The position numbers and the translations under genes are program-made. From positions 162,699-226,698 of the IMG/VR virus record IMGVR_UViG_3300025098_000012: a stretch of DNA of 64,000 nt. One strand, 5' to 3'. Positions 1,900 to 56,740 of the stretch are shown here, piece by piece (position 1 is the first letter of the stretch; every line of letters begins with the position of its first letter). The notes under the pieces were generated by a model. That model was not told the DNA's origin. It was given only the letters and a program-made list of their open reading frames with translations, and did not search any database.

Positions 1900-2379
1900 T
1901 TAAATAACCTCTATCATCCAACCACGACCTAGACCGCCACCAAAAGATCCACGAGATGTCTGTAAGTAATCTTTGATAGCATACGCTATATCAACATCAC
2001 CCTCAAAGCGATCTTCCAAGTCATGAATACCTGCGTTCATATATATATCATCCATCTCAACGGGATGGCTTGCTTCTACTGCTAATGCAAAGTCAAAAAG
2101 ACTCACATTGCAAGACCAATGGTTATCTGGACAGATAAAGTTGATCTTTGATCTTTCTCCATTAGGGATGATGTTTACAACACATCGACCTGTTGCTTGG
2201 CTTTTGACCATTGAAAGTAGCTCTTGGACTGTCATCCTCTCCACTTCGTTTCTTGGTGATCCTGTAGAGATTGACACCTTGATCTTCGAGCTTGCTGTAC
2301 GATTTGAAGCTGTTTTGGACTCAAGTCGAGCAATCCTTTGCTCAAGGTCTTTGATGATTTCACTAGCAGATCTTCTCAT
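1900..2379 (-). CDS. MRRSASE-leader cassette protein (putative virion-internal cargo)
   Basis: ATG at 2379 after GGAG RBS; leader MRRSASEIIKDLEQRIARLESKTASNRTAS; unrelated C-terminal payload. Confidence 0.8.
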   Translation of the reverse strand: MRRSASEIIKDLEQRIARLESKTASNRTASSKIKVSISTGSPRNEVERMTVQELLSMVKSQATGRCVVNIIPNGERSKINFICPDNHWSCNVSLFDFALAVEASHPVEMDDIYMNAGIHDLEDRFEGDVDIAYAIKDYLQTSRGSFGGGLGRGWMIEVI

Positions 2380-4695: not shown

Positions 4696-5103
4696 CTACA
4701 GGCTGTTTTTTGCTCTGCGAATAACAGCAGGAGATGAAAGTCGATCACCCTTATTAGCACCCTCAATGATAGCAACCCAAGCCTCAACTGGAGAACTCGC
4801 TCTCAACTTCTTCTGTAAAGCCTCTCCCCACACTTGAATGTCCTGTTTAGTCATTTTTTGTGACTTCCAAGAGATCTTCTCTGATCCACCTCTAGTGTAT
4901 TCTAGCGTCATGGTAAACATAGCAATACCATTATCATCTTCAACTGTAGCTGAGTATCCTTCATCACTTTCTACAACACGACCCATAACGAGCGTAGAAA
5001 ATGCCTCCTCAGACCAAGAAAAAGCAAAAGGATTTGCTTGCTTTTCAAGACGGGCGATTCTCATCTCAAGATTTCTGATTACTTCACTAGCTGATCTTCT
5101 CAT
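4696..5103 (-). CDS. MRRSASE-leader cassette protein
   Basis: Leader MRRSASEVIRNLEMRIARLEKQA; cassette UTR and late motif at 5104-5165. Confidence 0.8.
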   Translation of the reverse strand: MRRSASEVIRNLEMRIARLEKQANPFAFSWSEEAFSTLVMGRVVESDEGYSATVEDDNGIAMFTMTLEYTRGGSEKISWKSQKMTKQDIQVWGEALQKKLRASSPVEAWVAIIEGANKGDRLSSPAVIRRAKNSL

Positions 5104-5170
5104 GTTTTTTCTCCATTGGTTTTTGGTTAATGAGATCACCTATGTGAAGATATAAATAAACTATTGAAAT

Positions 5171-5196
5171 CCCTAGATACAAAAAAACCCCATCTC
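5171..5196. repeat. 26-bp direct repeat (half terminator) identical to 6501-6526
   Basis: CCCTAGATACAAAAAAACCCCATCTC at both sites, flanking the LAGLIDADG gene and a membrane gene. Confidence 0.9.
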
Positions 5197-6605: not shown

Positions 6606-7484
6606 TTAACGCTGTACAGTAAGACGAGCAAGACCACGAGGGTTGTAAGCTCCGATACCCAAGTTTTCAAAGACACTGAAGCCGATTGTACGAGCTTTAG
6701 GATCGTCAGCAGAAAGGACGGTCAACTCGGTACGAACAGGGATACGACCAAACATCTCTGGCTCACAGCAGACATAAACAGTTCCAACAGGAACAAGTCG
6801 GCTAGTGATGATCTGAGCACCCCAAAGGGTAGCCTGTAGACCAGTCTTGAGAAGTGCCGCTTGGCTCTCGATGTCGAGAATGTCACGACCGAACTTACGG
6901 ATGTCAGCGTAATCACGAGCATTCATGAATACACGAGCAACACGAAGGTCATGACGCTCAATGAGGCTGTATGCGTCAGCAAGAACAGCACCATTAAGAG
7001 GAGCGATAACAGGAATGTCAGCGTTAGTCTGACCTGCAACGCTATCAAATCCGTTAGCCGCAACTGCATCAAGGATAGCGAATACACGCTCGTCCTCAGC
7101 CGCTTGGATTTGAGCACGAGCAAGATCCTGAGCACGCTCGATAAGGTCGAACCTACGCTCTTTGATCTGTGTGAGTGGGATCTCTGGGTTAGAAGCGATC
7201 TCAAACAATGGGAAGATAACCCTGCGTGGCTTGGTGATAGCAAGGATGTTCTCACCCTCTTCACCAACTACGAAAGCAGTCACATCGGGATCTTTGTCGT
7301 AGATAGGTAAAGCACCATCTGGAAGTTGCTCGACTAAGAAAGTCTTACGACCAACAGAGGTGTAATCTCTACGAAGGCGAAGTGGTTGAGTCATTGAAGC
7401 GGCGAGCTTCGCACGACCCTGTGGAGTCTTAATGTAGTCAGAAATGATCTTCTGTTTTACGGCATTATCAACTGTATTACTCAT
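6606..7484 (-). CDS. Major capsid protein (HK97 fold)
   Basis: 292 aa; HK97-like pattern (VVGEEGE, FEIASNPEI, MNARDYADI, LWGAQIITS, ENLGIGAYNP); lies after protease, scaffold and decoration genes. Confidence 0.85.
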   Translation of the reverse strand: MSNTVDNAVKQKIISDYIKTPQGRAKLAASMTQPLRLRRDYTSVGRKTFLVEQLPDGALPIYDKDPDVTAFVVGEEGENILAITKPRRVIFPLFEIASNPEIPLTQIKERRFDLIERAQDLARAQIQAAEDERVFAILDAVAANGFDSVAGQTNADIPVIAPLNGAVLADAYSLIERHDLRVARVFMNARDYADIRKFGRDILDIESQAALLKTGLQATLWGAQIITSRLVPVGTVYVCCEPEMFGRIPVRTELTVLSADDPKARTIGFSVFENLGIGAYNPRGLARLTVQR

Positions 7485-9852: not shown

Positions 9853-11292
9853 TTATTTCTGCCCGTAAGTGTTAAGGGATAAGAGTTTAGCTAATCTTAC
9901 AAGACGAAGAGTGTCTTGCTTCGACAGATTTTTACCATTTAAGTAGCTTGCTTGCTCCAGATAATCAACTACATCATTATACTGACTGGTTGAGCCGAGC
10001 AAACTAGCTAACTTATAAACATGGGTAGGAATCTGAACATTACAGTGATTATTCACTAGAGTTATGTTCAGTACAGCTTCTTCAACAGACTTAGCTGTTC
10101 TAACAGAAGCATCTAAGAGGCTCATGTACTTGGAAGCAGACATACCCTCTTTGACAATCGTATCGTTTTGTTCAACGACAGACTTATCAATAGGTGGGTT
10201 CATTACTTCTTGAGCCTTCTCTGCTTTGAGTTCGTTTTCTAGCTTTTGGCGAAAACGATCTACAATAGCAGTCTCGTAAACATTTTCGAGCTGTTTCAAC
10301 AAAGACTCGGAAGGTGCGTCAGCTTTATCATCACCACCTTCATCCTCATCCATGTCAAAAGGTCCAGCTTTCTTGTTTAGCTGACCATGAGGGTCATACC
10401 AAGGAGAACTCTGTAAACTAGACGCTTTAGCAATCCACTTCTGTGGAACTTCATTAAGTTGATCATCAGAAGCTGATTTAGCCATGTCAGCTTTAGGGAT
10501 GTCTAATACATTGCGAGCGACAGCTCCTACAAATGCAGGGGTTGCAACCCAAGATGCTTCGATGAATGTAACACCTGCTGTACCACCGATTTCTTCATGA
10601 CCACAAAGCTCTGCTACTCTATGTTGATTTCCTTGTTCATCATAGAAAACATTGCCTTTCTCATATTTGATATGAGAACACATCTCGGTTTCATCAGCGG
10701 CCACATGACCACATTTGGTGCAAATGGTAAAGTCTACGCTACATCCCATAGACATTGAGTTCATTTGACCCGACTCAATCTGTTTAACCAAGTCTTTGTG
10801 TTTGCGATCAGTAGCGACAAGGATGTCTACATATAAAGAATCACCGATGTCTCTAAGAACAGCATCAATGATCCGACCCTTAGATAGTTCTTCAACTTGG
10901 ATATGCTCAACAAAGTTATGAGCACCAATGAAGGTCTGATAAGATTTCTTAATCACACCTCTTGACCATGAGTCGAGGTTGTTATTGATGAACTTATCAG
11001 TGCCAGAGCTGACACGATAGTCAGCGTATTTACGATTAATAGTTTGTCCACCCTCAGTGATCGAGCCTGTCTTTGTGTTTGGAGGTGTGATTGCATCGAC
11101 AGAGCAAACGATAGTGGAGTGGGTAAGTAGAAATCTATCGGGAGTGAAAGGTTCGCCTAAGATGTCCTCTGCTTGCTTTTTGAGCGAAGCATTGATGGTT
11201 TTAGCACCAGAAGCGATCCTTACCTTATCCCATTGTAGACCATGAATGGAGGGCTGAACTACATTAGCCCTAGCATATCTTAAAAATGCCAT
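9853..11292 (-). CDS. Prohead (capsid maturation) serine protease with Cys/His insertion
   Basis: TFIGAHNFVEH, KGRIIDA, SMSMGC followed by CTKC-x-CSH, FIEASWVATPAF; head-operon position. Confidence 0.7.
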   Translation of the reverse strand: MAFLRYARANVVQPSIHGLQWDKVRIASGAKTINASLKKQAEDILGEPFTPDRFLLTHSTIVCSVDAITPPNTKTGSITEGGQTINRKYADYRVSSGTDKFINNNLDSWSRGVIKKSYQTFIGAHNFVEHIQVEELSKGRIIDAVLRDIGDSLYVDILVATDRKHKDLVKQIESGQMNSMSMGCSVDFTICTKCGHVAADETEMCSHIKYEKGNVFYDEQGNQHRVAELCGHEEIGGTAGVTFIEASWVATPAFVGAVARNVLDIPKADMAKSASDDQLNEVPQKWIAKASSLQSSPWYDPHGQLNKKAGPFDMDEDEGGDDKADAPSESLLKQLENVYETAIVDRFRQKLENELKAEKAQEVMNPPIDKSVVEQNDTIVKEGMSASKYMSLLDASVRTAKSVEEAVLNITLVNNHCNVQIPTHVYKLASLLGSTSQYNDVVDYLEQASYLNGKNLSKQDTLRLVRLAKLLSLNTYGQK

Positions 11293-11295
11293 GCT

Positions 11296-14200
11296 TTACC
11301 CCTTAACGATGTCGGAAGGTTTGATGATAAAGAGGCAGGTATAACAAGCGAGCAGTTTCTCACTCTTACCTCCTCTTCTTTTGTAAACAGTATTGCCGAG
11401 TGGAGTTTTACACTTGGGACAACAAGGTTTTTCCTCATTCCGACATTGGCGATAAGTACGATCTTTCTTATACCAATAAATAGCTTGCTTCATGTATCTG
11501 GAGGCAACACGATTAGCTTGCTTTTTGACGGCACGAGAAGTTACAGGAACAGTACCAGCTCCACCTGGTATAGTATCTTGATCGTCAGTATAAATGTTCA
11601 AGTAATCACCCGAAGTATCTACAACAAGATCTTCTACAGGATAGCGTTGCGATCCATGAGGGAACTGCACATCGACCATACCAATTGCAGGGAAGATAGC
11701 TATAACGAGTCCAGACCTTGACGGATTACCACCAAGAAAGGGGTATACACGCATCCCTAGCTCGAACGCTTGGGATCTACGCTGATAGTCAACATATTGT
11801 GTAGATCGTTTTTGCATGATTACAGTGCCTCCACTCTTATAGTAGGTGTCAATAAATGATCTATTAAAATTATTTGCTTGTTTATTTGATGAGGTAGACT
11901 CAATTTCTTGTGTCGCTGTGTCATCAAATAGCTCAGTAAGCCTACTTCTTATGTCTTTGAGCCTCTGTCTCTTAGTCGCACCATCTAAACTTTTCACTTT
12001 TTCTAGTTCTTGCTGTATCTGCTCCCATCTAAACTTTTTCGTGTTATCACTGTAGAGCTGAATACCGTCAATGCTACTCCGAGTTTCTTCAATTCTCCAT
12101 CTTGTCCTAAATTCTTCTCCAGCGGCTTCTCTCTCTTCTTCGGTGTATTCTTTACCAGTTGATAGATCAACACCATCAACGAACACCTCGAAAAACTTAT
12201 CTTTGTTTTCTCTCCAAAAGAGCTTCATTTGCTCTTTGACTTTCTTAGAAGGACCAGAGCTATCACCTTTAGGTTTGTAGTAGCCATCCCCCTTAGACTC
12301 TTTTTCGACAGTATGGAGATTAACGAAACCTCCACTCATGTAATCCCTTAACAGTTTCTTCATGTCATCAGACAATGGGTTAGGACAGGGATCATCTGAG
12401 GGGAGGAGCTTCTTGTCTCCCACACCTGCGGCGTTATTTGTAGGCCCACCAGGACAGTAGTCGTCATCTAATAAATCCAACATATCTCCATAAGGTCCTT
12501 GCTCACCTCCAACTACAGCTTTAAAATCTTCTGTGTCGAGGTTTTCAGTGACCGACTCAATCAAATCTCGTGTCTTACTAGGGTTAGTGCCTTGTTGGGA
12601 GAGCATACTGATGCCTTCTTCCCAAGCCTCTGATCCTGTTTGTCTTGCGAGTTCAAGTAATCGGTCGGGTACTTCGGCATACCCATCAATGACACCCTCA
12701 CTATTTATCATGCGTATTGTATTGAGGGCTGTTTCAGATGCTTTTAAGTTTACGAGCTTACCCTGTAATGATTTCTTTTCTTCATCAGACAGACCTTCCC
12801 CATCATTTTCTAGGAGTGCTTTTGCTTCACCAATCTCCTCTGCGACCCTTCCAACCATAGCATTACGCTGTTCTTCATTCATCTTCTTAAAGCGTCTGCC
12901 TTGAACTCTGCGTACATTCTGTAGGTGCTTCTCTTTATCGTGATCATCCCCATCAGTAGGGAACTCAAGTAGCCCGAACTCTGGATCTTCCACAATACTC
13001 TTTTGTGCATGGGTTGTTGCTAAGTAGCTACCTAGATTTTGTGCGTACTCCTTTTGAACAGCCTCATAGTTTTCTAAGTCTGATTTTAAGGAACTGAGAG
13101 AATCTTCTGCATCTTTCAAAGAATTCTTAAGTTGCTTTAGAGTTTCCTCATCTGTGTCATCGTCAGCTTCCGATAACTTTTGTTGAGCTTTATTCACCTT
13201 GTCGGTGGTTTCCTTAATGTCCTTATTGAGTTGTTCTACTGTAGGAGGAGGTGTGGGGGGCTTTAAATCCTTTGCCTCTTCGTCAATGTAAGACTGTAGA
13301 CCATCGAGTCCTTGATTTCTCATCACTTCTTCGACTTTGAATGCACCGGATCCGTAAGCCTGCACCATTTGTTGAACTTGATCTTCGGTCAACTCATCAA
13401 GTGCATCTACAGTTTCACTTATCCTTTGAATAAATGTGCGAGTGCTCTTTCTAGTTGATGCAAGATCCTTCTTCTCAAGTCCTTTGATTTGTTCCTTGAG
13501 ATCACGCTTCTCTTTATCGCTTAAAGAAGGATCTTCGAGCTTTTTTTCGAGATTCTCTATCTTCTCACTCGTGCCTTTGCTTAACTTATCCCTAAAGGCT
13601 TTCTCAAGGCGATCCTTGATTTCTGCCTTTTGGACATAGCTCGGCTGTTCCAATAAAGGAGCACCTTCAACAAACGGAGGTTCTTCTTTCGGAGGTGTAT
13701 CATCCCCCTTTGCGTCATCCTTTCCCGATTCATTTCTAGGTTTTGGCTCACCCTTACCTTTGCTTTTACCCTTGCCTTTGGGTTCTTCTTCTCCTGTTTG
13801 CTTCTCACGCTCTTTAGCTCTCTCGTCCAAGACATCTTTGGTTTCTTTTACTTCTTCTTCAGTAATGTCGGATGCCTCTTGAACATCAACCTCGACAGCA
13901 TCAATCCCCTCTTCTTCAAGAGATGTGGTGAGCTTTTCAGCGACTCTCTTTTTATAAGGACCTCGCTTTTTGCCTTTATCGGATCTTGTTTTTCTTTTCT
14001 TCTTAGGTGGTGGTTCACCTACTTCTTCCCGAACCTCCTCATGGATGTCCATAAGAAGAGCCATAATGTCTCTCATGGTGCGTTCTTCAACAAGAGACAT
14101 ATCTCTCATATCACGACCATTGTTCATCCTTGAGAGCAGGTCATATTGTTCATCATTGAGAGTAGCGGCTACGGAATAGCTGACATCACTAGAGTCTCCC

Positions 14201-14541
14201 TTAGACCCTCTAGCTTTATCCATAGCTTTGTTAAAGTCTTGGACAGCTTTTGGGTGGGCACGATTATAAGCTGTATTAAACGACAACTCATCACCTGTCA
14301 GCCTACTCTTATACTTACGACTTTTGAGCTTGTCTTTGACCTTCTTAACGATCTTCTGCTCTTTTTTCTGTTTCCTTTTCTGCTCTGGCGTGAGCTTTTG
14401 CTTCTTTCGCTTTTTCTTTTTAGTTGGCTTACGAGATCCGTCCTCACGCTTTTGAGAAGCCGCAACTCGGTGTGCCTCTAAAAGAAGGCGATCTGTTTTC
14501 TCTAGCTCCGTTTGGAGTTCTAGTAGAAGGCGACTAATCAT
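11296..14541 (-). CDS. Large charged virion-associated protein; C-terminal 173 aa probably also a separate gene (11296-11817)
   Basis: 1081-aa ORF; internal late motif at 11852, GGAGG at 11828-11832, ATG at 11817; C-terminal SH3-like segment, RVASRY tag and CxxC zinc ribbon. Confidence 0.7.
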   Translation of the reverse strand: MISRLLLELQTELEKTDRLLLEAHRVAASQKREDGSRKPTKKKKRKKQKLTPEQKRKQKKEQKIVKKVKDKLKSRKYKSRLTGDELSFNTAYNRAHPKAVQDFNKAMDKARGSKGDSSDVSYSVAATLNDEQYDLLSRMNNGRDMRDMSLVEERTMRDIMALLMDIHEEVREEVGEPPPKKKRKTRSDKGKKRGPYKKRVAEKLTTSLEEEGIDAVEVDVQEASDITEEEVKETKDVLDERAKEREKQTGEEEPKGKGKSKGKGEPKPRNESGKDDAKGDDTPPKEEPPFVEGAPLLEQPSYVQKAEIKDRLEKAFRDKLSKGTSEKIENLEKKLEDPSLSDKEKRDLKEQIKGLEKKDLASTRKSTRTFIQRISETVDALDELTEDQVQQMVQAYGSGAFKVEEVMRNQGLDGLQSYIDEEAKDLKPPTPPPTVEQLNKDIKETTDKVNKAQQKLSEADDDTDEETLKQLKNSLKDAEDSLSSLKSDLENYEAVQKEYAQNLGSYLATTHAQKSIVEDPEFGLLEFPTDGDDHDKEKHLQNVRRVQGRRFKKMNEEQRNAMVGRVAEEIGEAKALLENDGEGLSDEEKKSLQGKLVNLKASETALNTIRMINSEGVIDGYAEVPDRLLELARQTGSEAWEEGISMLSQQGTNPSKTRDLIESVTENLDTEDFKAVVGGEQGPYGDMLDLLDDDYCPGGPTNNAAGVGDKKLLPSDDPCPNPLSDDMKKLLRDYMSGGFVNLHTVEKESKGDGYYKPKGDSSGPSKKVKEQMKLFWRENKDKFFEVFVDGVDLSTGKEYTEEEREAAGEEFRTRWRIEETRSSIDGIQLYSDNTKKFRWEQIQQELEKVKSLDGATKRQRLKDIRSRLTELFDDTATQEIESTSSNKQANNFNRSFIDTYYKSGGTVIMQKRSTQYVDYQRRSQAFELGMRVYPFLGGNPSRSGLVIAIFPAIGMVDVQFPHGSQRYPVEDLVVDTSGDYLNIYTDDQDTIPGGAGTVPVTSRAVKKQANRVASRYMKQAIYWYKKDRTYRQCRNEEKPCCPKCKTPLGNTVYKRRGGKSEKLLACYTCLFIIKPSDIVKG

Positions 14542-21241: not shown

Positions 21242-22722
21242 GAATCGAAACAGACTTTAAACTCGACTTTAAAGATGTGTTGTTTAAGCCTAAGAGGTCT
21301 ACCCTCACATCACGCAAAGATGTGAAACTATCTAGGGAGATTAAACTCCCTCACAGTAAAAGAATATGGGAGGGTGTACCTATAGTAGCCGCTAATATGG
21401 ACACCGTAGCTACCTTTGAAGCAGGTAAAGTCCTCACCGACCTCCACATGATGGTCTGTCTCCATAAGCATTACACCGAAGAACGATACATGGAGATATA
21501 TGATTGGGTGTATTCCAATCAAGGATGTGGCTACGCTCCATATTGGGCTTACTCTATGGGTATCTCAGACGAAGAATTTGATAGACTTGTGCGTATTCAA
21601 GATAAGACCAATGGAATGATCCTCACGATCTGCATTGATGTGGCTAATGGGTATACAGAGCGTTTCATTGAGTTTGTCGCTAAGGTAAGGAAAAAGTATC
21701 CACTCTCCATCATCATCGCAGGGAATGTAGTCACAGCAGAAATCACTGAACAGTTGATCTTAGCAGGTGCTGACATCGTAAAGGTTGGGATTGGTTCGGG
21801 ATGCTTCGTTGCTGGTACACCTATCCTCACCAATAATGGACTCAAGGCGATTGAGGAAGTTGAGGTAGGAGATAAAGTAATGACTCACATGGGTCGTGAG
21901 CGTACTGTGTCGAACACCTTCACCCATACCGATAAGAATCTACTCGTTAATGTGAATGGTATCAAAGCGACACCAAACCATGAGTTCTATGTGGTACATA
22001 AGTCTGATGCAGATAAGGTGAATGACGAGAACATCCATGAGTACGCAAAGTGGGTTCGAGCTGATGAACTGACCTATTCACATTATCTTTTAGAAGCACC
22101 CTCATTTAGTCTCATAGAAATCAATACCCTAGAAACAGAACCTAACCCATCGGGGATCGCCTATGACCTTGAGGTCGAGGAAGATCACTCATATACGATT
22201 GGGGAGAATAGGACTGTAGTTCATAACTCAGCGTGTACGACCAGAATACAGGCAGGTGTAGGTTATCCACAGTTAAGTGCTGTTATTGAGTGTGCTGATG
22301 CCGCTCATGGTTTAGGTGGACGCATCATGTCAGATGGTGGTTGTACCTGTCCTGGTGATGTAGCTAAGGCATTTGGTGGTGGAGCTGACTATGTGATGCT
22401 TGGGGGTATGCTCGCAGGACACACCGAGAACCTTAGACTTGATGAAGATGGAAACGCACTCTTCTATGGTATGTCATCAGACACAGCCATGAACAAGTAT
22501 CATGGTGGTGTTAATGACTATCGTTCGTCAGAAGGACGCACAGTAGCCATTGAGCGTAAAGGTTCAATCAAAGATACCCTCCAAGACATACTTGGAGGCA
22601 TCCGATCAACCTGTACTTATATTGGTGCAAGCGAGCTAAGAGAACTGAGTAAATGCACGACATTCATTCGTGTTCGTCAGCAATATAACTCTGTGTTTGA
22701 GTCTAGGACGCTTAAGTCTTAG
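21238..22722 (+). CDS. guaC: GMP reductase (type 1) containing an intein
   Basis: [44 protein letters not shown]|[45 protein letters not shown]. Confidence 0.9.
21802..22227 (+). mobile_element. Mini-intein (142 aa, no endonuclease)
   Basis: Starts [10 protein letters not shown]; block B ATPNHEF; [11 protein letters not shown]; ends VVHN before Ser+1. Confidence 0.92.
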
Positions 22723-22985
22723 TAAGCACCTGCGATGTGCTTGATTTCTTCTTCAACCCTCATGGAGAGCGTATACCAACGCTCTGCTAAGTCAGCATAG
22801 TAGCGATCCTCCACATCTCCTCTGAATGAAGGCATCTTTTCAAGTTCACGCTCCATCTCTTGCATAGCCTTTAAGACTTTTTCTGCCGACTTACGAATCG
22901 GTGTTGAAGATTGCTTCTGTTCAAGTCTAGCAATCCTAGACTCAAGATTTCTTATCGTTTCTTCCGCTGTTCTTCTCATGTTCAT
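22719..22985 (-). CDS. MRRxA-leader protein
   Basis: [26 protein letters not shown]; ATGA-coupled to the SOD stop. Confidence 0.7.
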
Positions 22986-23607: not shown

Positions 23608-24156
23608 TTATGGTCGTTTAAGTATAGCTAGGCATAATCCAGATGAAGGGTATTTACGACCTAGTGATGCCCATACTCGTTTAGCATCATTGCTAGTTGA
23701 ACCTGTTTCCATACAACCATCTGGAACAAATATAAAAGGCTGACCTACTTTATTCCAGTAAGTTCTAGCAAAAGTAAGGTACATATCAGTTCCTATTTTC
23801 TTACCTTTGTATTCATCTTTAATTGCAGTATTGTAAACTGAAAGGATAGGGGCATAAGGTCTATCCTTCCAATCATTCTGAACAAGGTGCGGGTATTTGT
23901 TCAAAAGTTTTTGAACATCATTAGAACATTTTAGGCTCTCAACCTGTGATATGTCTTGCCCCATGATAGGGTTTAGTTTTTTTTCATTTAACCCACCTTG
24001 TATTTGACCAATGCGTTTACGACCATGAAAAATGACAAGTTGATAAAAACTCCCAACATTACCCTTAACAGTGTACTTGATCTTTTCATCTCTCAATGGG
24101 TTAGCTATCTCTAATCTCTTTGCATATTTACTAGCTACTCTTTGATATGGTTTCAT
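23608..24156 (-). CDS. GNAT-like acetyltransferase with RVA tag
   Basis: MKPYQRVASKY start; IKDEYKGKKIGTDMY acetyl-CoA-motif-like segment; SNDAKRVWASL; late motif at 24196. Confidence 0.55.
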   Translation of the reverse strand: MKPYQRVASKYAKRLEIANPLRDEKIKYTVKGNVGSFYQLVIFHGRKRIGQIQGGLNEKKLNPIMGQDISQVESLKCSNDVQKLLNKYPHLVQNDWKDRPYAPILSVYNTAIKDEYKGKKIGTDMYLTFARTYWNKVGQPFIFVPDGCMETGSTSNDAKRVWASLGRKYPSSGLCLAILKRP

Positions 24157-24223
24157 CTGTTTATTCCTTATATGCCTAATCATATAAGTATAGTGATAAA
24201 TAAACTATTGAAAGGTTAAATCT

Positions 24224-39198: not shown

Positions 39199-39753
39199 TT
39201 ACTGACCAAAGTCCCAAGGAAGGTCGTACATATCTTGACCCGAACGAGCGTCTTTCCAACCAACTCGTGCTTGGATAGAACCACGAGCAGGAATGATTTC
39301 TCCCTTAGCTAGAAGCTCGTTACTGTATTTAGCTCCGACACCATTAGTAGCAATCGTGATATGTGGGTCATCATTCTTAACAAGTCGAGCTAAAGGACCT
39401 TGAGGCTCAACAAGAACAGCCATACCCTTATCGTCATGTGCGTAGCCCACGATGTTAAGAACAACATTCTTACCGATAAGATCAGCATAAGGCTCAAGGA
39501 TGTTAGACTCAGCACGACCCTCTCTCTTGAGAGCTTTCTTTTCCTTCTTATCAAAGAACTCAATGGTCATGTGGTGAGCGGCTACTTTCCAACCCATAGC
39601 TTCTGGATCAAGACCCGATTGATCTTGGAACCAGTTAAGCAAATCTCTCTTATCAATAACAGCTTCGGCAAACATGACGCTTGCAGGTTTATCTTGGGCG
39701 AGCTTCCTCATGTGTACAGAAGCGACTCTTCGGATCATGCGATTGTAGTTCAT
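39199..39753 (-). CDS. 2H phosphoesterase with RVA tag
   Basis: RRVASVHMRKLA leader; HMTI and HITI motifs; late motif at 39801. Confidence 0.75.
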   Translation of the reverse strand: MNYNRMIRRVASVHMRKLAQDKPASVMFAEAVIDKRDLLNWFQDQSGLDPEAMGWKVAAHHMTIEFFDKKEKKALKREGRAESNILEPYADLIGKNVVLNIVGYAHDDKGMAVLVEPQGPLARLVKNDDPHITIATNGVGAKYSNELLAKGEIIPARGSIQARVGWKDARSGQDMYDLPWDFGQ

Positions 39754-49657: not shown

Positions 49658-50074
49658 TTACTTAGCAGGGATTGAGTTTGGCAGATTAGTGATTGTTTCA
49701 CTAATCCAATCATGACCACTATCTAACAAGTCTTCACCCCAAAAGCTAGGGTCAGAGATTTTCACTGTAATGCAAATGCAAGATTCACATTCCGATGTAG
49801 TTACAAAATCTTCAATCATCTGACTGTGGGGCCACTGATTGATAGAGGTTTTAAAATCTTCTACAGATCTTTTTAGGATCGCCCTGTTCATGTGCATGAA
49901 ACAAAGGTTAATTTTGTCTTCTTCATACTCACGATCATCTACCATGATGATAGCACGAGCATTACTTAATTTTGCTGTCTTTGCGGCAGACTTCGTTCTT
50001 CTTGAGGTGCTGTTTTCAAGTCGAGCAATACGATCTTCAAGATTTCTGATGGTTTCGTTTGCTGATCTTCTCAT
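49658..50074 (-). CDS. MRRSA-leader cassette protein
   Basis: MRRSANETIRNLEDRIARLENSTSRRTKSAAKTA; cassette UTR at 50075-50140. Confidence 0.8.
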   Translation of the reverse strand: MRRSANETIRNLEDRIARLENSTSRRTKSAAKTAKLSNARAIIMVDDREYEEDKINLCFMHMNRAILKRSVEDFKTSINQWPHSQMIEDFVTTSECESCICITVKISDPSFWGEDLLDSGHDWISETITNLPNSIPAK

Positions 50075-50107: not shown

Positions 50108-50788
50108 TCACTTATTGATAGGGGGGATAAATAAACTATTAACACGCTCGTACTTGATGACCTCATCAACCAAACCAAGCTCAAGACACTTCTTAGGGTT
50201 CATCCAAAGATCACGCTTTAGAAGATCTTTGAGTTGCTTCTTCTTCATGTTGGTGTTCTTGAGGTAAATGGACTCCAACATTTCCATGAGCGAGTCCATA
50301 GACTCTTTCTCATCAGTTAGGTTCTCGTATGTTCCCCATACACCTGTGCTGATTTGGTGGATGAGCATGAAACTATGCTCGGTGATGAAGCGTTTAGTTC
50401 CGACACAAGACATGATAGTCGCCGCTGACGCCGCCGACCCCTCGACATAAGTGAAAACAGGGATGTCCGAGTCTAAGATATGGCTCGCCCCTGCAAGACC
50501 ACTAAAGGCACATCCTCCACCACTATTGATATGAAGGTGGATCGCAGGAGCTTGAGAGAGTCCAAGATCAGTGACCATATTAATGATCTGTTGACCGATG
50601 GACTTGATCGCAATCCCCATCTCCATGACAGACTTCGGAGAGATGCCTTGATAGAGGTAGATGTGATTGTCGCTTACGGTAATCTCACCATAGAAATCTG
50701 CTTGTGCGTTTTTGCGTTGAACATGAGCTTCTTCGTCATCATAAATTCTACGCATAGTGGGTGGGTGGTTAAAGTATTTCATAATCAT
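50108..50788 (-). CDS. clpP: ClpP-like (S14) serine protease
   Basis: LHINSGGG, VEGSAASAATII, FMLIHQ, RDLWMNPKKCLELGLVDEV. Confidence 0.8.
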   Translation of the reverse strand: MIMKYFNHPPTMRRIYDDEEAHVQRKNAQADFYGEITVSDNHIYLYQGISPKSVMEMGIAIKSIGQQIINMVTDLGLSQAPAIHLHINSGGGCAFSGLAGASHILDSDIPVFTYVEGSAASAATIMSCVGTKRFITEHSFMLIHQISTGVWGTYENLTDEKESMDSLMEMLESIYLKNTNMKKKQLKDLLKRDLWMNPKKCLELGLVDEVIKYERVNSLFIPPINK

Positions 50789-51207
50789 GCCCTTTCTCGG
50801 ATTATGTGAAATCCTTCTAGCCAAGCTAGAACAAGAGGTCTAAGAGATTGAGTGGCGAGTGGGGAAAAACACTCTGGCATTTTCCGATGTCCTAAGATAC
50901 AGTGGTCTTTCTTATACGACAGACAATGGTCTTTTTCATCACAGTCTTTGGGTACATCAAGGAGCTTTAGACAGCCTCTAGGCTCTCTAAGGTTTTGATT
51001 CATCAGAGGGGTTGTGAACCCTCTCATTGCTTGGTCGAGTATGTCATGTGAGACTTCGGGGATTAAACGCTCTACAGGTGTTCCTACAAGGTCAGAGAAC
51101 GCACCCCAATTTGTACTCTCATAAGGAAGGATCTTAGCGATCTTAGGGTTATTCCAATGACGATCAGTAAGGGTCATAAAGATTAACCCATCTCTACGGT
51201 ACATCAT
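50785..51207 (-). CDS. Hypothetical Cys-containing protein
   Basis: 140-aa ORF coupled to neighbours. Confidence 0.6.
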   Translation of the reverse strand: MMYRRDGLIFMTLTDRHWNNPKIAKILPYESTNWGAFSDLVGTPVERLIPEVSHDILDQAMRGFTTPLMNQNLREPRGCLKLLDVPKDCDEKDHCLSYKKDHCILGHRKMPECFSPLATQSLRPLVLAWLEGFHIIRERA

Positions 51208-51575: not shown

Positions 51576-51860
51576 TTAATGTTGTCTATGCAGACATCTC
51601 GCCCTAACCTCATTGAGCATAGATTCGATCTTATTAAACTTATCTAAAAATTCTTTATAGGGTCGAAGCACATCTTCATCACTGAGGTTATCGAGCATTT
51701 CAGCGGCATCATCAAAGATTCTTTTAAGATCACGATTTTCACTTAGAAAGTCATGGTTTTCATACTTTTTTCTAAGGTCTACGAGCCTACCTAGATTGTC
51801 ATCTAGGTTTTCTCTCACATCGTGAAACATCTTGGTTTTAGAGACTGCGTTTCTTACCAA
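51576..51860 (-). CDS. Hypothetical protein
   Basis: ORF overlapping the upstream stop; start uncertain. Confidence 0.55.
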   Translation of the reverse strand: MVRNAVSKTKMFHDVRENLDDNLGRLVDLRKKYENHDFLSENRDLKRIFDDAAEMLDNLSDEDVLRPYKEFLDKFNKIESMLNEVRARCLHRQH

Positions 51861-53584
51861 CTTTTTTTTTGATAAGAAGCTCTTCTACGACCACCACTCA
51901 TAGCACCCTCAAGTTTACGGATGAGTTTCTGTAGACCTGCAATGGCTTTACGAGTACGAACTTCAACAGGCTGACGACCTGCACGACCAGTTCCTTGAAT
52001 ACGATCAAGTGCGAGGCGAATGTCGTTCGCAGACTCTTGGGAAAGTTGATCTCGATTAGTGCCGAGTGAACGCTGTGTTGCCATGAGCTGTTGTACAGCT
52101 CGCTCATCAACGATACCGTTATCTTGGAATGAAGCAATCGCCGCACGAACAACAGAAACGGTATCTGTGATCATAGCTTGTGAGTAAGCAATGTCTTGGT
52201 TCTGCCACATTCCAGGATTTGAAGTAAGACCGATTGGATACGAGCCATAGAGAGGACCGCTCTTACGGTGTTCACCTCTCTGTGAATATGCAGAGACATA
52301 ACCCTTCTTGAGCTTAGACTTGAGCTGTTTAACAAAGAAAGCCTGTGCTTCATAAGAGTCCATAAATGATTTATCGGCTCTACGACCCGAAGAACCAAGA
52401 CGACCATAAAGGATTTCTACATCTGATCCGCTAACGACCATCTCGTAGAATTTGCTTTTGTTCTCGGACTCACCGATGAGATAAAGCATACAAGAGGTAG
52501 CCTCTGCCATTGAGCGACCCTCATGATAAGCTGTGCTTGAGCGAACACCTGCGAGTTGTGGCTCACCTGCGGCTTCACGATTCATGCTTGCAGTGCGATT
52601 GAGGTTTGCCTCAAGACGAGCGATCCTCATCTCAAGGTTACGGATTACTTCACTAGCTGATCTTCTCATTTGAGATCCTTTCTTTAGAAGCCTTCTGACT
52701 TCATCTTTAGAGTAAGAGTTGTCGAGCTTACGCTCATTACGATAGATGAGGTGACGCAAACGCTTACGCTCCTCATCATTGAGTGAATCAATGCCTCTAC
52801 GCTGACCTTTATTGATAAGCATAAAGTCATCACGCTCAAGATAGGCATTGGATTTAAGGTCTGCAAGTAGCTTAGATGCTGGAGATGACTGACTAGCAAT
52901 GATTTCTTCAACCACATTCATCTGTCTTTCAGAGAGCTGAATACGATCTTCAGCTTTAGACTTGAGTTGTGCCAAGAAACGATTACGAGGGTCGAGTTCA
53001 AGTGCCTTTTCAATACGGACAAGCTGATTACTTGTCTGATTACCAACCATTTGAGTTTGCATCAGTTTTTCGTCAAGCACTTCAATCTGTCTCTCGGAAA
53101 GCTCTCTACCACCCATAAACTGATCGTAGAGACTTCTGAAAAAACGATTAGTAGGTTGCATCGCAATCGCTTGGTTGAGCTTCGTTAAGATGTCTTGATC
53201 GGGATTCTCAATACGCTCTTCAGTTTCGATTAGGATTTCCTCAACCCTGTAGTGAAGGGGATCTCCTTGTTGAAGCTCATTTAAGATGTCTTTCCACCAA
53301 TCACTATTCGGATTAAGAGCAAGAACTGCTTGAACACGCTCAATGCTCTCTACATCTCTGAACTTACCTGGAAAGTCGATCTTGAGTTGGATGAGTCCAT
53401 CACTGATGGACATATCTCCAAGACTCCTTAACAGAGACACAAGAACATCTGGTCCTTTTTTGTTGAGTTTAACTTCAAAATCGTCAAAGTTAATCATGGC
53501 ATTGTCTCTACGAGACTCCATCTCAAGCATCTCTAGTGCTTCTTCTACTGTGGTATTGTAGAAATATATTTGATTGGCTTTCAT
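51854..53584 (-). CDS. Multidomain late protein: helical repeats + internal MRRSASE leader + WGR domain
   Basis: LSERQ repeats; MRRSASEVIRNLEMRIARLE; SKFYEMVVSGSDVEILYGRLGSSG...QLKSKLKKGY; late motif at 53623. Confidence 0.75.
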   Translation of the reverse strand: MKANQIYFYNTTVEEALEMLEMESRRDNAMINFDDFEVKLNKKGPDVLVSLLRSLGDMSISDGLIQLKIDFPGKFRDVESIERVQAVLALNPNSDWWKDILNELQQGDPLHYRVEEILIETEERIENPDQDILTKLNQAIAMQPTNRFFRSLYDQFMGGRELSERQIEVLDEKLMQTQMVGNQTSNQLVRIEKALELDPRNRFLAQLKSKAEDRIQLSERQMNVVEEIIASQSSPASKLLADLKSNAYLERDDFMLINKGQRRGIDSLNDEERKRLRHLIYRNERKLDNSYSKDEVRRLLKKGSQMRRSASEVIRNLEMRIARLEANLNRTASMNREAAGEPQLAGVRSSTAYHEGRSMAEATSCMLYLIGESENKSKFYEMVVSGSDVEILYGRLGSSGRRADKSFMDSYEAQAFFVKQLKSKLKKGYVSAYSQRGEHRKSGPLYGSYPIGLTSNPGMWQNQDIAYSQAMITDTVSVVRAAIASFQDNGIVDERAVQQLMATQRSLGTNRDQLSQESANDIRLALDRIQGTGRAGRQPVEVRTRKAIAGLQKLIRKLEGAMSGGRRRASYQKKSW

Positions 53585-53649
53585 CACATCTCCTTCGGTT
53601 TGTTTCACAGCAAAGGAGGAGGTATAAATAAACTATAAAAGGTAAAGAT

Positions 53650-54483: not shown

Positions 54484-54750
54484 ATGTCATTACCTAGAGA
54501 ACGAAAAAGAGCTGACTATCGAGTCATTGCTCGCATCTTGCAACTGAGTCATGGACAAGCAGATCCAAAAGACTCATTGCTTGAAAAGATTTCTAATGTA
54601 TTTAATCGTAATGGTGGCTCTTGGGTATTATTCTTTGAAGGACACCCAAAACACAGCAAGCTACTTAAAGTAGTGATAAAAGCTGTCGTAAAACATAAGA
54701 AGGATCAACATGAGCGAAGAACTAGAAGCCAAATCAGTTGGGAAGATTAA
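54484..54750 (+). CDS. Late hypothetical protein
   Basis: Late motif at 54438; GGGGG RBS. Confidence 0.6.
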   Translation: MSLPRERKRADYRVIARILQLSHGQADPKDSLLEKISNVFNRNGGSWVLFFEGHPKHSKLLKVVIKAVVKHKKDQHERRTRSQISWED

Positions 54751-56386
54751 ACCCCGATCAAAAGCGATCACTCGTAAGCTCAATCCTGCCGAGATGAAAT
54801 CGAGGGTCAAAGTGGCGATGACCACAGGAGGCTCTATGATGGGGTCGGGTGGGAACTTCTACTCACCAGAGTTATCTACTGACTTTCTTGAACTACCTCA
54901 AAGTCAAGACGAACAACGCAACTACTTTAGGTTCTTTTATCGCACTGACCCCTTCGTAGGACAGGCGATTGATCTACATACAGAGCTTCCCCTCTCTAAG
55001 ATCAGATTAGGGCTACCTAAAGCTCGCAACCGAGACATGGCTTATGAAGCACTTAGGTTCTGTGAAAAATGGGCGAAGCGAGTCGGACTACTTCACCGAC
55101 TCATAGAAATCTTACATGAGTTCAACCTGCTCGGTGAGGTTTTTGTTTTCTGTGAGGACAATAATCCAGATGTGCCTCAAGAGGTGACACATAGTGGTCG
55201 GAATGTTCTTAAAGAAGATGGCGAAGCGTTTACTGAGTGGACTGAGTATGAGGACTCCCATGAACGAGCTTACAAGTGGCTCAAGAGGAACTATAAAGGG
55301 TGGACAGGTGTTCGTATCCTCCCTCCCGAACAAGTTCACATGGAGAGTTTTCCTTTCACTAGTGAGAAGATCATTCAACTTATTCCCGATAGTAAAACTC
55401 GTGATGTAGTTGAACGAGCTTCGGTTAATGATCCCTCTGCTCTTCGTATTGTAGACTCAATGCCAGGAGATGTTGTAGAAGCTATTCGAGATGGTCGCAA
55501 CATTGACCTCAATACTGATCCCGATCAAGGATCATTCGTTTATTATATGGCTCGTAAGAAATCACAATATGAACCTCGTGGACACTCTATGCTTGAGCGT
55601 TGTCTTCGTATCCTCGTTTATCGAGATAAATTAAGACAAGCCCAAACTTCTATCGCTTCAAGACACATGACTCCTATCCGACTCGTATATGCAGAGGATA
55701 TGGATGCGTCTGATGTTGAAGAGTTGAGAGATCAAGTGGATCTTGCACTACAAGATCCAGACTATTCTATCATCGCTAACTTCCAAGTCTCTTGGGAAGA
55801 GATGGGTGCTGACTCTCGTTTGCTTGAACTATCGGGCGAATATGATATGACAGACCGACAGATGTATGCAGGTCTAGGTGTTACAGAATCTCTGTTATCT
55901 GGTGAGTCTAGTTATAGTGGCGATAGGATCAACTTAGAAGTCATCAACACACGCTATATGCTTATGCGTGAGGTTCTTCAAGAGATGGTTGAAGAGAACA
56001 TCTTGAAGCCAATGTGTAGACGAATGGGTTTCGTTGAAATAGATGAAGATGGTGATGAGGTTGTAGTACACCCAACCCTTAGCTTCACTCGACTTGGATT
56101 GCGTGATAATCAAGATACCTTTGACGCTCTCTTTAACCTGTATCAGAAGGGTTCATTGGACATTGATGTGATCCTAGAACTCCTCAATGTAGATCCTATG
56201 ACAACTAAGGCTAAACTTGAGCGTGATATGTGGACACTCAATGACTCTCAGTTTAACGAAGTTCTGAGAGGGGTCTATGGTGAAGCAGGTCGTATGTTAG
56301 CCGAGAACACAGAAGCGATTGAGATCATCGCTAAGAATCTTGGATTAAAGTACAACCCACCAGAAGATGACGGTGGTCGTTTCTAA
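54710..56386 (+). CDS. Portal protein
   Basis: 558 aa; FFYRTDPFVGQAIDLHTELPLS, EFNLLGEVF, GHSMLERC, QAQTSIA, GVTESLLSGE are typical of large-phage portals. Confidence 0.75.
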   Translation: MSEELEAKSVGKIKPRSKAITRKLNPAEMKSRVKVAMTTGGSMMGSGGNFYSPELSTDFLELPQSQDEQRNYFRFFYRTDPFVGQAIDLHTELPLSKIRLGLPKARNRDMAYEALRFCEKWAKRVGLLHRLIEILHEFNLLGEVFVFCEDNNPDVPQEVTHSGRNVLKEDGEAFTEWTEYEDSHERAYKWLKRNYKGWTGVRILPPEQVHMESFPFTSEKIIQLIPDSKTRDVVERASVNDPSALRIVDSMPGDVVEAIRDGRNIDLNTDPDQGSFVYYMARKKSQYEPRGHSMLERCLRILVYRDKLRQAQTSIASRHMTPIRLVYAEDMDASDVEELRDQVDLALQDPDYSIIANFQVSWEEMGADSRLLELSGEYDMTDRQMYAGLGVTESLLSGESSYSGDRINLEVINTRYMLMREVLQEMVEENILKPMCRRMGFVEIDEDGDEVVVHPTLSFTRLGLRDNQDTFDALFNLYQKGSLDIDVILELLNVDPMTTKAKLERDMWTLNDSQFNEVLRGVYGEAGRMLAENTEAIEIIAKNLGLKYNPPEDDGGRF

Positions 56387-56446
56387 TAGTTTATTTATAC
56401 CCTCTCATAAGTGATCTCTTTAACCTTAAACCAATGGAGAAAAACC

Positions 56447-56740
56447 ATGAGAAGATCTGCTAGTGAAACTATTAGAAATCTTGAAGATCGTATCGCTCGC
56501 CTTGAAGGTAAGACAGCGAAAATCAACCTCAAATCCCTTGCCAAGCACATAAGTAAAAAAAGAAGCGATGGTACTGGTACTGTTGGCTTTGTGGAATATG
56601 ACGCACGAAGCCAAACAGTAATTTTCCTCAATGGGGACTATGAAGATATAGTAGTACCTGTAGACAAGTTGTTAGCTCAACTTATCCGAGAGGAGATGGG
56701 TAATGACCTGTATGACTTAGAGGGCAACACTATCAGTTAA
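56447..56740 (+). CDS. MRRSASE-leader cassette protein (plus strand; track strand label is wrong)
   Basis: ATGAGAAGATCTGCTAGT at 56447 reads MRRSAS on the + strand, ending TAA at 56738-56740. Confidence 0.85.
   Translation: MRRSASETIRNLEDRIARLEGKTAKINLKSLAKHISKKRSDGTGTVGFVEYDARSQTVIFLNGDYEDIVVPVDKLLAQLIREEMGNDLYDLEGNTIS

What the first reader, a model, noticed from the sequence alone, without database searches (positions are those of the whole stretch)
51854..53636. Leader cassette caught in an internal fusion ahead of a WGR domain
Seen: 27 nt at 52643-52669 are identical to 5077-5103 but lack UTR/RBS, sitting mid-ORF between LSERQ-type helical repeats and a WGR domain, followed by RTAS. Established: WGR binds nucleic acid in PARPs. 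Inference: the leader works internally, and polyproteins grow by cassette fusion.
Basis: partly seen in the sequence, partly recalled or inferred. Interest (0 to 1): 0.6.

Follow-up and report, generated by a model that had tools for sequence, protein, structure and literature searches.

The report
Portable leader peptide fused mid-gene
In an uncultured marine jumbo phage, a 20-residue helix that normally begins about a dozen small unknown proteins sits in the middle of one real 576-residue gene, joining an orphan domain to a WGR domain. Relatives carry the same pieces split, swapped or trimmed at exactly this peptide.

Summary
The 27 nt at 52643-52669 equal 5077-5103 and lie mid-ORF in a 576-aa gene on the minus strand (51854-53584). 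The gene encodes an orphan N-terminal domain (NTD), the leader, and a WGR domain plus four-helix bundle.

The window is the end of a 227-kb marine phage contig distantly related to Bacillus phage G. The gene lies between the portal and a ClpP-type head protease.

The leader starts 11 other ORFan proteins here and about 30 in a complete 376-kb relative. Most follow a shared promoter-like element and 5'UTR.

The fusion is not an assembly artefact:
- About 20 orthologous protein clusters carry it.
- An independent sample bridges the junction.
- The internal leader is the best-conserved segment of the protein.

Split forms exist: NTD plus a separate leader-WGR gene, NTD-leader-stop, and leader-WGR alone. 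One (L046) derives from the fused form by NTD deletion and starts at the same ATG. On the NTD tree the fused forms are not one clade (AU p 0.0009).

Shown: the leader is a position-independent peptide module and a recombination junction.

Inferred, about 45%: it is a T4-CTS-like capsid-targeting and processing helix.

Also possible: the internal ATG gives a second, shorter product. Cleavage and release of a WGR fragment are untested.

The parts
51854..53584 (-). One gene of 576 aa plus stop: NTD, leader, WGR domain, four-helix bundle.
   Evidence: ORF and translation. An identical 576-aa database protein, P0024. Full-length orthologues at 80-89% identity. Contigs bridge the junction.
53623..53635 (-). 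Promoter-like TAGTTTATTTATA upstream of the fused gene.
   Evidence: An exact copy of the motif that precedes the leader genes. There are 47 sites with up to 2 mismatches against 10-19 in shuffles.
53589..53593 (-). GGAGA ribosome-binding site, 4 nt before the ATG at 53584.
   Evidence: Sequence.
52670..53584 (-). NTD, residues 1-305: a small alpha/beta subdomain, then helical repeats with two LSERQ motifs, ending in the hinge LLKKG-x-x.
   Evidence: AlphaFold model with pLDDT 85. No convincing fold match: best Z 6.9, atlas TM below 0.4. No Pfam or PHROG family. The family has variable tails.
52676..52681 (-). SD-like AAAGGA (Lys-Lys-Gly codons), 6 nt before the internal ATG.
   Evidence: The same context is the only available start in the NTD-deleted relative L046.
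52610..52669 (-). Internal leader, residues 306-325: an amphipathic helix. The 27 nt identical to 5077-5103 are 52643-52669.
   Evidence: Predicted helix 311-329 in P0003 numbering. Mean column identity among 16 fused orthologues is 0.86.
52496..52609 (-). Post-leader linker with the NRTAS and REAAG-x-PQL motifs. Predicted disordered but conserved.
   Evidence: Module X is inserted between the leader and this segment in P0009, P0030, P0034 and P0047.
52289..52495 (-). WGR domain.
   Evidence: Pfam PF05406, E 7e-13. Fold matches 2ra8_A (Z 10.1, 31% identity) and PARP1-3 WGR.
51857..52279 (-). Conserved disordered segment, four-helix bundle and a basic tail (GGRRRAS...).
   Evidence: The bundle matches only generic four-helix bundles.
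4696..5103 (-). Paralogous leader gene (135 aa ORFan) with the canonical promoter-like element and UTR. It holds the other copy of the 27-mer.
1900..2379 (-). Leader gene (159 aa ORFan).
22719..22979 (-). Leader gene (86 aa ORFan) that uses an AAAGGA SD and lacks the canonical UTR.
49658..50074 (-). Leader gene (138 aa ORFan) directly downstream of the ClpP-type protease. Relatives carry a different cargo in this slot.
56447..56740 (+). Leader gene (97 aa ORFan) directly downstream of the portal gene.
50108..50824 (-). ClpP-type head maturation protease (context; start codon uncertain).
   Evidence: Pfam CLP_protease, E 1e-25; phrog_94, E 4e-43.
54710..56386 (+). Portal protein (context).
   Evidence: phrog_16240, E 8e-32. 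26.5% identical to the phage G portal, 36.8% to Tunturi_5.
6606..7484 (-). Major capsid protein (context).
   Evidence: 38% identical to phage G gp27. phrog_2522, E 2e-51.
9853..11292 (-). Second candidate head maturation protease (context).
   Evidence: phrog_18299, E 2e-15. Homologues are annotated as head maturation protease in phiRSL1, Lauda and AD1. Matches phage G gp19.

Best explanation
Window 51854-53584 (minus strand) is one genuine late gene of a marine jumbo phage distantly related to phage G. It encodes three modules: an orphan N-terminal domain (NTD), a 20-24-residue amphipathic 'leader' helix, and a WGR domain with a four-helix bundle.

**Shown**
- The leader is a portable peptide module. 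It is N-terminal on 11 other ORFan proteins in this genome and about 30 in a complete relative.
- It is C-terminal on NTD-only relatives.
- It is internal here, where it is under purifying selection.
- Its two edges are recombination junctions at which modules are repeatedly fused, swapped, inserted and deleted.

**Inferred**
- The helix docks its bearer onto a common partner during head assembly, as the T4 capsid targeting sequence does.
- Its two invariant Leu-Glu pairs may be sites for a head protease.
- The fused protein would then be loaded as one unit and possibly cut into NTD and WGR parts.
- The WGR part would be a nucleic-acid-binding cargo.
- The internal ATG, with its AAAGGA 6 nt upstream, probably also gives a shorter leader-WGR product from the same gene.
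For: **The gene is real and conserved**
- Five IMG/VR contigs and about 20 protein clusters carry full-length fused orthologues, with a constant two-residue hinge.
- Contigs from three samples bridge the junction with no differences.

**The leader is a family**
- There are 12 copies in this genome and about 31 in the 376-kb relative G001.
- M1, A5, L12, E13, R15, L19 and E20 are invariant, and nothing is alignable after residue 24.

**Selection acts on the peptide**
- Variability by codon position is 0.17, 0.08 and 0.33.
- Fused orthologues differ by many synonymous changes in the leader.
- Column identity is 0.86 for the leader, about 0.75 for the NTD and 0.80 for WGR. The two hinge residues score 0.2-0.3.

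**Position independence**
- NTD-leader-stop proteins: P0032, P0054 and the Met-less P0056.
- A Met-less internal copy in L031.

**Junction behaviour**
- L018 carries the NTD with a 100-aa tail, a stop, the promoter-like element and UTR, then a separate leader-WGR gene.
- Leader-X-WGR, leader-WGR-WGR and NTD-leader-other forms also occur.
- Fused rows are not one clade on the NTD tree.

**Head context**
- The gene sits between the portal and the ClpP-type protease.
- Leader genes lie next to the portal, the protease and the capsid gene.
- The slot after the protease carries leader genes with different cargo in relatives.
- The same promoter-like motif precedes a gene beside the capsid gene.
- Nearly all cargoes are ORFans, as the T4 internal proteins are (PMC9026906).

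**Internal start**
- L046 lost about 0.9 kb of NTD, keeps the NTD promoter and the last NTD codons out of frame, and has no other in-frame start.
Against: - No direct evidence shows that any leader protein is in the virion or is cleaved.
- The capsid-protein-plus-leader complex test gave no verdict.
- No sequence similarity to any known targeting peptide was sought or seen.
- The proteases here are a ClpP type and a phrog_18299 type. Their specificity is unknown, so the Leu-Glu cleavage idea is only an analogy with T4 and phiKZ-type enzymes.
- Leader genes in G001 are scattered over the whole genome rather than confined to head modules.
- The relative LR745208.1 shares the portal (71% aa) and the second protease but gave no leader match.
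- The AAAGGA is forced by a conserved Lys-Lys-Gly that is also present in Met-less forms. Its presence is therefore not evidence of selection for a start.
Confidence: 0.5

Rival explanations
1. The leader is a general coiled-coil or hub tag unrelated to the capsid. It brings about 30 ORFan proteins to a common phage or host partner in the cytoplasm. The fusion simply shares one tag between two cargoes.
For: - Heptad-like spacing of I9, L12, I16 and L19.
- Leader genes are scattered genome-wide in G001.
- No partner has been identified.
Against: - Leader genes flank the portal, protease and capsid genes, and share a promoter-like motif with a capsid-adjacent gene.
- The pattern of a conserved short leader with hypervariable ORFan cargo matches the T4 internal proteins.
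Confidence: 0.22
2. The conserved element acts mainly at the RNA and translation level. The promoter, UTR and first codons form an expression cassette. In the fused gene its remnant serves chiefly as an internal start that makes leader-WGR, and the long ORF is secondary.
For: - Codons 2-3 are AGA in 23 of 24 cases against 30% genome-wide, and the first 14 nt are nearly invariant.
- Met is kept in all fused orthologues.
- L046 uses this ATG as its only start.
Against: - Codons 7-20 vary freely at third positions while the residues stay fixed.
- Met-less internal and C-terminal copies exist.
- The NTD reading frame and hinge length are conserved in about 20 fused clusters. The long product is therefore selected.
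Confidence: 0.15
3. The leader is a recognition tag or degron for the ClpP-type protease. It times the destruction of these proteins rather than their packaging.
For: A ClpP-family protease lies four genes away, and a leader gene follows it directly.
Against: - This protease matches phage head maturation protease families (phrog_94, E 4e-43).
- No unfoldase partner was noticed.
- A degron placed mid-protein or at the C-terminus of the NTD is hard to reconcile with strong conservation of both flanks.
Confidence: 0.08
4. The mid-ORF position is an artefact: two adjacent genes joined by misassembly or a sequencing error, or a neutral relic of a recent fusion.
For: The leader is a repeat, and repeats can misjoin contigs. 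The 27-nt identity with a paralogue looks recent.
Against: - The same in-frame junction occurs in about 20 diverged clusters from JGI, ENA and Logan assemblies, on contigs up to 376 kb.
- A unitig from an independent sample bridges it.
- The leader is the best-conserved segment.
- 54/60 nt identity is only slightly above the family range of 45-52.
Confidence: 0.02

Closest known systems
Capsid targeting sequences (CTS) of the phage T4 internal proteins IPI, IPII, IPIII and Alt
   Same: Both are short N-terminal peptides (10-19 residues in T4), shared by otherwise unrelated, fast-evolving small proteins in a phage with a head protease. In T4 the peptide both targets and carries the processing site, and it works when fused to foreign proteins (PMC9026906, PMC5694885).
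   Different: - Packaging and cleavage are unproven here.
- This leader is longer, helical and heptad-like.
- It occurs about 30 times per genome, and also internally and C-terminally.
- The phage is distantly related to phage G, with ClpP-type and phrog_18299-type proteases rather than gp21.
PeSL mobile regulatory cassettes of T4-type phages
   Same: Both are repeated promoter-containing cassettes that precede ORFan genes and act as recombination sites for insertion, deletion and replacement of genes between close relatives (PMC2839356, PMC4122927). Here a promoter-like element plus a roughly 50-nt UTR precedes 9 leader genes, and slots change cargo.
   Different: - This cassette runs 60 nt into the coding region, so exchanges are in frame and give protein fusions, not only gene swaps.
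- No terminator stem-loop was examined.
- Promoter activity is not shown.
In-frame nested head genes such as T4 gp21/gp21s
   Same: An internal in-frame ATG with an SD-like sequence lies inside a head-module gene, which could give a long and a short product (for gp21s; here).
   Different: Two products are not demonstrated here. The SD-like sequence is a by-product of conserved Lys-Lys-Gly codons.
WGR domains of PARP1-3 and the bacterial WGR protein 2ra8
   Same: The Pfam WGR match and the fold agree: 2ra8_A at Z 10.1 with 31% identity, and PARP1 WGR at Z 7.9.
   Different: - No catalytic PARP domain is present.
- The motif reads Y-G-R rather than W-G-R.
- The domain is followed by a generic four-helix bundle.
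- Nucleic-acid binding is untested.

Membership tests
WGR domain (Pfam PF05406) | Profile match above the curated threshold. | tested here: met
   48.9 bits against a cut-off of 22, E 7e-13, profile positions 2-75 of 79. Confirmed in the genome scan.
WGR domain (Pfam PF05406) | WGR fold as in PARP and 2ra8. | tested here: met
   2ra8_A: Z 10.1, rmsd 2.2 over 71 residues. PARP1: Z 7.9. Foldseek probability 1.0 for PARP2 and PARP3 WGR.
WGR domain (Pfam PF05406) | Binding of nucleic acid (DNA breaks in PARPs). | not testable with these tools
   The motif is Y-G-R-L-G, with Arg kept and Trp replaced by Tyr.
T4-type capsid targeting sequence | A short N-terminal peptide shared by otherwise unrelated proteins of one phage. 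| tested here: met
   35 leaders were aligned. Seven positions are invariant and nothing is alignable beyond about residue 24.
T4-type capsid targeting sequence | The bearers are incorporated into the prohead or virion. | not testable with these tools
   Only genomic context speaks to this. The capsid-protein complex test gave no verdict.
T4-type capsid targeting sequence | The peptide is removed by the prohead protease at a defined motif. | not testable with these tools
   L12-E13 and L19-E20 are invariant. The specificity of the proteases is unknown.
T4-type capsid targeting sequence | Homology to the T4 CTS and a gp21-type protease. | not tested
   No comparison with T4 sequences was run. 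The family scans named only ClpP-type and phrog_18299 proteases.
PeSL-type mobile regulatory cassette | A repeated promoter-bearing cassette before non-core genes. | tested here: met
   A conserved element of about 65 nt precedes 9 leader genes. The motif has 47 sites against 10-19 in shuffles. Promoter activity is itself unproven.
PeSL-type mobile regulatory cassette | The cassette is non-coding and includes a terminator stem-loop. | tested here: not met
   The conserved unit continues through 20 codons. A stem-loop was not examined.
PeSL-type mobile regulatory cassette | Gene replacement, insertion or deletion at the cassettes between relatives. | tested here: met
   The protease-adjacent slot changes cargo. 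Fused, split and deleted forms occur. The AU test gives p 0.0009.
Viral polyprotein | Proteolytic release of the modules. | not testable with these tools
   No data.
In-frame nested gene | An internal start with a ribosome-binding site, and two products. | tested here: inconclusive
   ATG plus AAAGGA at a 6-nt spacing. The same context is the sole start in L046. The products were not observed.

The most novel reading that the evidence does not exclude
The leader is a position-independent capsid-loading and processing signal of an abundant marine jumbo phage clade. It sends about 30 hypervariable ORFan effectors per genome into the head for co-injection, among them a WGR protein that would bind nucleic acid. 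Because the signal is also an in-frame recombination site, the phages build and dismantle multi-cargo polyproteins at it.
Probability: 0.3. Interest if true: 0.75.

Novelty: new variant of a known kind. Interest (0 to 1): 0.55.

Why it matters
If the leader is a loading tag, it marks the whole set of packaged, probably injected proteins of an uncultured and very abundant marine jumbo phage group. The capsid protein alone has more than 2,000 clusters at 90% identity. Those proteins could then be read directly from sequence.

It would also show how in-frame recombination at a shared peptide-coding cassette creates and dissolves multi-domain virion proteins.

Independently of function, the natural series gives a worked example of gene fusion and fission at a defined 60-nt module. 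The series runs from split, to fused, to NTD-deleted, to X-inserted forms.

Such a tag could also be tried as a packaging handle once a relative is in culture.

Tried and rejected
- **Complex prediction.** Leader (alignment A4) against the major capsid protein (A5) gave no verdict (score 0.00), so it is evidence neither way. The capsid alignment was shallow, at 88-97% identity.
- **Known phages.** tblastn of the whole protein and of the leader found nothing. Distant DNA search hit only LR745208.1, at the portal. That 485-kb phage gave no leader match.
- **Family scans.** Pfam and PHROGs on the other leader proteins found only chance-level hits. Among 31 G001 leader proteins there was one DUF4258 and one HAAS match.
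- **NTD fold.**
  - The ESM Atlas feature search gave no usable hit.
  - The atlas shape search gave TM up to 0.37.
  - The wide PDB search gave a best Z of 6.9 on a 73-residue subdomain.
  - I therefore name no fold.
- **C-terminal bundle.** It matched only generic four-helix bundles. A PARP helical-domain resemblance in Foldseek had rmsd 15-20 Å and was dropped.
- **Capsid gene.** PF05065 did not find it. Phage G gp27 did.
- **Second protease.** It has no solved relative by sequence.
- **RNA evidence.** No RNA run holds the locus, and all holders are stored as contigs, so transcript starts could not be read.
- **Gene conversion.** I considered it as the cause of the 27-nt identity. It is not needed, because the pair is only slightly above the family range and the first 14 nt are constrained in all copies.
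- **Large profile search.** Not used. No claim here rests on absence of relatives.
Full report
**Where the window lies**

The window is the last 64 kb of a 226,698-bp IMG/VR virus contig, 73% complete by CheckV. Its portal is 26.5% identical to that of Bacillus phage G, 36.8% to Tunturiibacter phage Tunturi_5 and 71% to the uncultured 485-kb phage LR745208.1. Its 292-aa capsid protein is 38% identical to phage G gp27. That capsid protein has more than 2,000 database clusters at E below 1e-10, almost all from marine metagenomes. The finding therefore concerns an abundant, uncultured marine jumbo phage. A complete relative, G001, is 375,691 bp.

**The observation**

- The gene is on the minus strand. 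With the ATG at 53584, preceded by GGAGA, it encodes 576 aa and ends at 51854. The database holds the identical 576-aa protein (P0024).
- The 27 nt at 52643-52669 equal 5077-5103. A third copy at 2353-2379 has three mismatches, and shuffles give none.
- On the coding strand these 27 nt are the first nine codons of a 20-codon unit.
- That unit starts the 135-aa ORF at 4696-5103. In the gene under study it begins at residue 306.
- Pfam places a WGR domain 58 residues further on (E 7e-13).
- Upstream of the internal copy is coding sequence, not the conserved upstream element of the other copies.
This is the same kind of ribosome-binding site that the leader gene at 22719-22979 uses.

**The leader family**

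- The genome holds 12 copies, 11 of them at the N-terminus of small proteins of 86-180 aa.
- Nine are preceded by a nearly identical stretch of about 65 nt. It contains TAGTTTATTTATA, a conserved untranslated region and GGAGAA.
- G001 has about 31 copies.
- In an alignment of 35 leaders, M1, A5, L12, E13, R15, L19 and E20 are invariant, and R2, R3, E7, I9, A17 and R18 nearly so. A weak [RK]-Q-A-[SG] preference follows, and then nothing aligns.
- The hydrophobic positions 9, 12, 16 and 19 follow heptad spacing, and the model makes the segment a helix.
- Variation sits at third codon positions (0.33, against 0.08 at second positions), so the peptide is what is selected. Codons 2-3 are AGA in 23 of 24 cases against 30% genome-wide, so the extreme 5' end also carries a nucleotide-level constraint.
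- The cargoes are ORFans. Nothing significant appears in Pfam or PHROGs for the ten others here. Among 31 in G001 there is one DUF4258 and one HAAS hit.

**Is the fusion real?**

Yes.
- Five IMG/VR contigs encode the full-length protein at 80-83% identity.
- A domain-restricted search found about 20 further fused clusters of 568-584 aa from JGI, ENA and Logan assemblies, on contigs up to 376 kb.
- All have exactly two variable residues between the conserved LLKKG and the leader Met.
- A 1,005-bp contig and a 151-nt unitig from an independent sample bridge 52669/52670 without a difference. Paralogous contigs match only 52611-52669 and then run into the canonical untranslated region.
- Among 16 fused orthologues the leader has the highest mean column identity (0.86). 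The NTD scores about 0.75, WGR 0.80 and the two hinge residues 0.2-0.3.
- The DNA of three orthologues differs by seven or more synonymous changes within the 20 codons.

The peptide is thus maintained in its internal position.

**Split and rearranged relatives**

- (a) A Tara Oceans scaffold (L018) has the NTD as a separate 404-aa gene. It matches up to LLKKGS and then carries a 100-aa tail and a stop. The promoter-like element, untranslated region and a 273-aa leader-WGR gene follow. After that comes the same 105-aa, 140-aa and ClpP-protease series as in the window.
- (b) L021 and L047 have canonical stand-alone leader-WGR genes behind unrelated genes.
- (c) P0032, P0054 and P0056 are NTD proteins that end with the leader and stop. 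P0056 has no Met at that place. They lie divergent from the portal cluster, as here, and no WGR gene follows.
- (d) Other forms are NTD-leader-X-WGR (689-763 aa), leader-X-WGR, leader-WGR-WGR, NTD-leader-other, and NTD with tails that begin with degenerate RRxAS-like sequences.
- (e) L046 is a stand-alone leader-WGR gene that descends from the fused form.
  - It keeps the divergent 171-aa neighbour (88% identical) and the NTD gene's promoter-like element.
  - About 45 nt of unclear origin follow, then the last roughly 11 NTD codons, now out of frame.
  - The AAAGAAAGGA and the same ATG come next.
  - There is no other in-frame start after an upstream stop.
- (f) G001 holds two more internal copies: one Met-less inside a 231-aa ORF, and one preceded by a translated remnant of the untranslated region.

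On a tree of the NTD alone, the state after the hinge needs at least 18 changes. Holding the 21 WGR-fused rows together costs 107 log-likelihood units (p-AU 0.0009). Two caveats apply: the group was named after the tree was seen, and recombination inside the NTD would have the same effect.

Both edges of the leader are therefore junctions at which modules are joined, exchanged and lost. Fusion is not a one-way growth process.

**The other modules**

- The NTD folds with confidence (pLDDT 85) into a small alpha/beta subdomain and a run of helical hairpins carrying the LSERQ motifs. It has no convincing structural or sequence relative.
- The WGR domain matches 2ra8 and the PARP WGR domains. Its signature reads Y-G-R.
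- A strongly conserved but disordered stretch follows, then a generic four-helix bundle and a basic tail.
- Nucleic-acid binding is an inference from the PARP family only.

**How it most likely works**

The shown part is the module and junction behaviour described above. The function of the leader is inferred from four observations.
- The gene lies between the portal and a ClpP-type head maturation protease.
- Leader genes directly follow the portal and the protease and lie near the capsid gene.
- The slot after the protease holds leader genes with different cargo in relatives.
- The promoter-like motif also precedes a gene beside the capsid gene and the fused gene itself.

A short conserved N-terminal peptide on many unrelated, fast-evolving small proteins is the signature of the T4 capsid targeting sequence. 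That sequence binds the assembly core, carries the protease site, and works on foreign fusions (PMC9026906, PMC5694885).

I therefore favour a docking helix used during head assembly. The two invariant Leu-Glu pairs are candidate processing sites. On this reading the fused protein is loaded through a single internal tag and may be cut into NTD and WGR parts. I put this at about 45-50%.

The internal ATG may also give a separate leader-WGR product. L046 shows that this exact context can be the only start of the gene. However, the Lys-Lys-Gly codons are conserved in Met-less forms too, so the Shine-Dalgarno-like sequence is not itself evidence of selection.

Rivals are a cytoplasmic hub or oligomerisation tag, a mainly translational cassette, and a protease degron. 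The artefact reading is refuted.

**Comparison with what is known**

- Functionally the nearest model is the T4 CTS. Membership cannot be claimed, because packaging and cleavage are untested and the proteases are of other families.
- Genetically the nearest model is the PeSL cassette of T4-type phages, which mediates modular shuffling (PMC2839356, PMC4122927). This cassette differs in extending 60 nt into the reading frame, so recombination yields in-frame protein fusions.
- I found no paper linking WGR domains to phage capsids, and no known phage in the collection carries the leader.

**Verdict**

It is a new variant of known kinds: a targeting-peptide-like leader combined with a mobile cassette. 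Interest is moderate to high, limited by the lack of any direct evidence for packaging or cleavage.

Noticed in passing
window 23608-24183 (-), 39199-39753 (-), 11296-14541 (-, near its C-terminus); also G000 near 21397 and 32524: A second recurrent short motif, R-V-A-S-[RK]-Y-[MA]-K, lies a few residues from the N-terminus of four otherwise unrelated proteins and near the C-terminus of the 1081-aa protein. Shuffles give none. A similar string ends the NTD homologue P0062. It may be a second class of tag.
   Followed up: partly
window 8246-9814 (-): A 522-aa very acidic protein lies between the protease-like gene and the decoration-like and capsid genes. It has an EF-hand motif (Pfam E 2e-9), two repeats containing RVARLADNAVQVG-like strings, and an EEATEEEAT run. 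It is a scaffold candidate, possibly calcium-binding.
   Followed up: partly
window 9853-11292 (-) and 50108-50824 (-): There are two different candidate head maturation proteases in one phage. One is a phrog_18299 type next to the capsid module, homologous to phage G gp19 and to genes of cluster C mycobacteriophages. The other is a ClpP type next to the portal module.
   Followed up: partly
window 5195-6148 (-): A LAGLIDADG homing endonuclease gene (phrog_11023, E 1e-20) lies just downstream of the capsid gene, between it and a leader gene.
   Followed up: no
window 4058-4588 (-): A 176-aa ORF has an N-terminal signal-peptide-like stretch and a sequence that looks like a small outer-membrane beta-barrel. 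It has no family match.
   Followed up: no
whole genome G000; e.g. window 53623-53635, 5151-5163, 56375-56387: TAGTTTATTTATA-like motif: 47 sites with up to 2 mismatches against 10-19 in shuffles, mostly 30-60 nt before a start codon. It precedes non-leader genes as well, so it is probably a phage promoter class.
   Followed up: partly
G000:151384-151548 (outside the window); G001:31968-32135; G001 L032:8769-9497: Further WGR-like ORFs exist: small stand-alone ones of 90-105 aa, and a 242-aa leader-bearing paralogue with a degenerate WGR domain (P0020, P0021).
   Followed up: no
RRxAS-like motifs: window 52652-52666 (leader start), about 52586-52597 (NRTAS), about 51872-51886 (C-terminal RRRAS): Arg-Arg-x-Ala-Ser-like strings recur at the hinge, after the leader and at the C-terminus of the WGR module, and at the start of the alternative NTD tails in relatives. 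They could be a cleavage or modification site.
   Followed up: no
window 51576-51860 (-): A 94-aa ORF with a TTG start overlaps the stop of the WGR gene. L021 has a 106-aa ORF in the same overlapping position, while L018 has none called.
   Followed up: no
L021:4908-5942: In one relative the gene upstream of leader-WGR is a 344-aa protein with a very basic Lys/Arg-rich N-terminal third and a helical C-terminal part. It is unrelated to the NTD.
   Followed up: no
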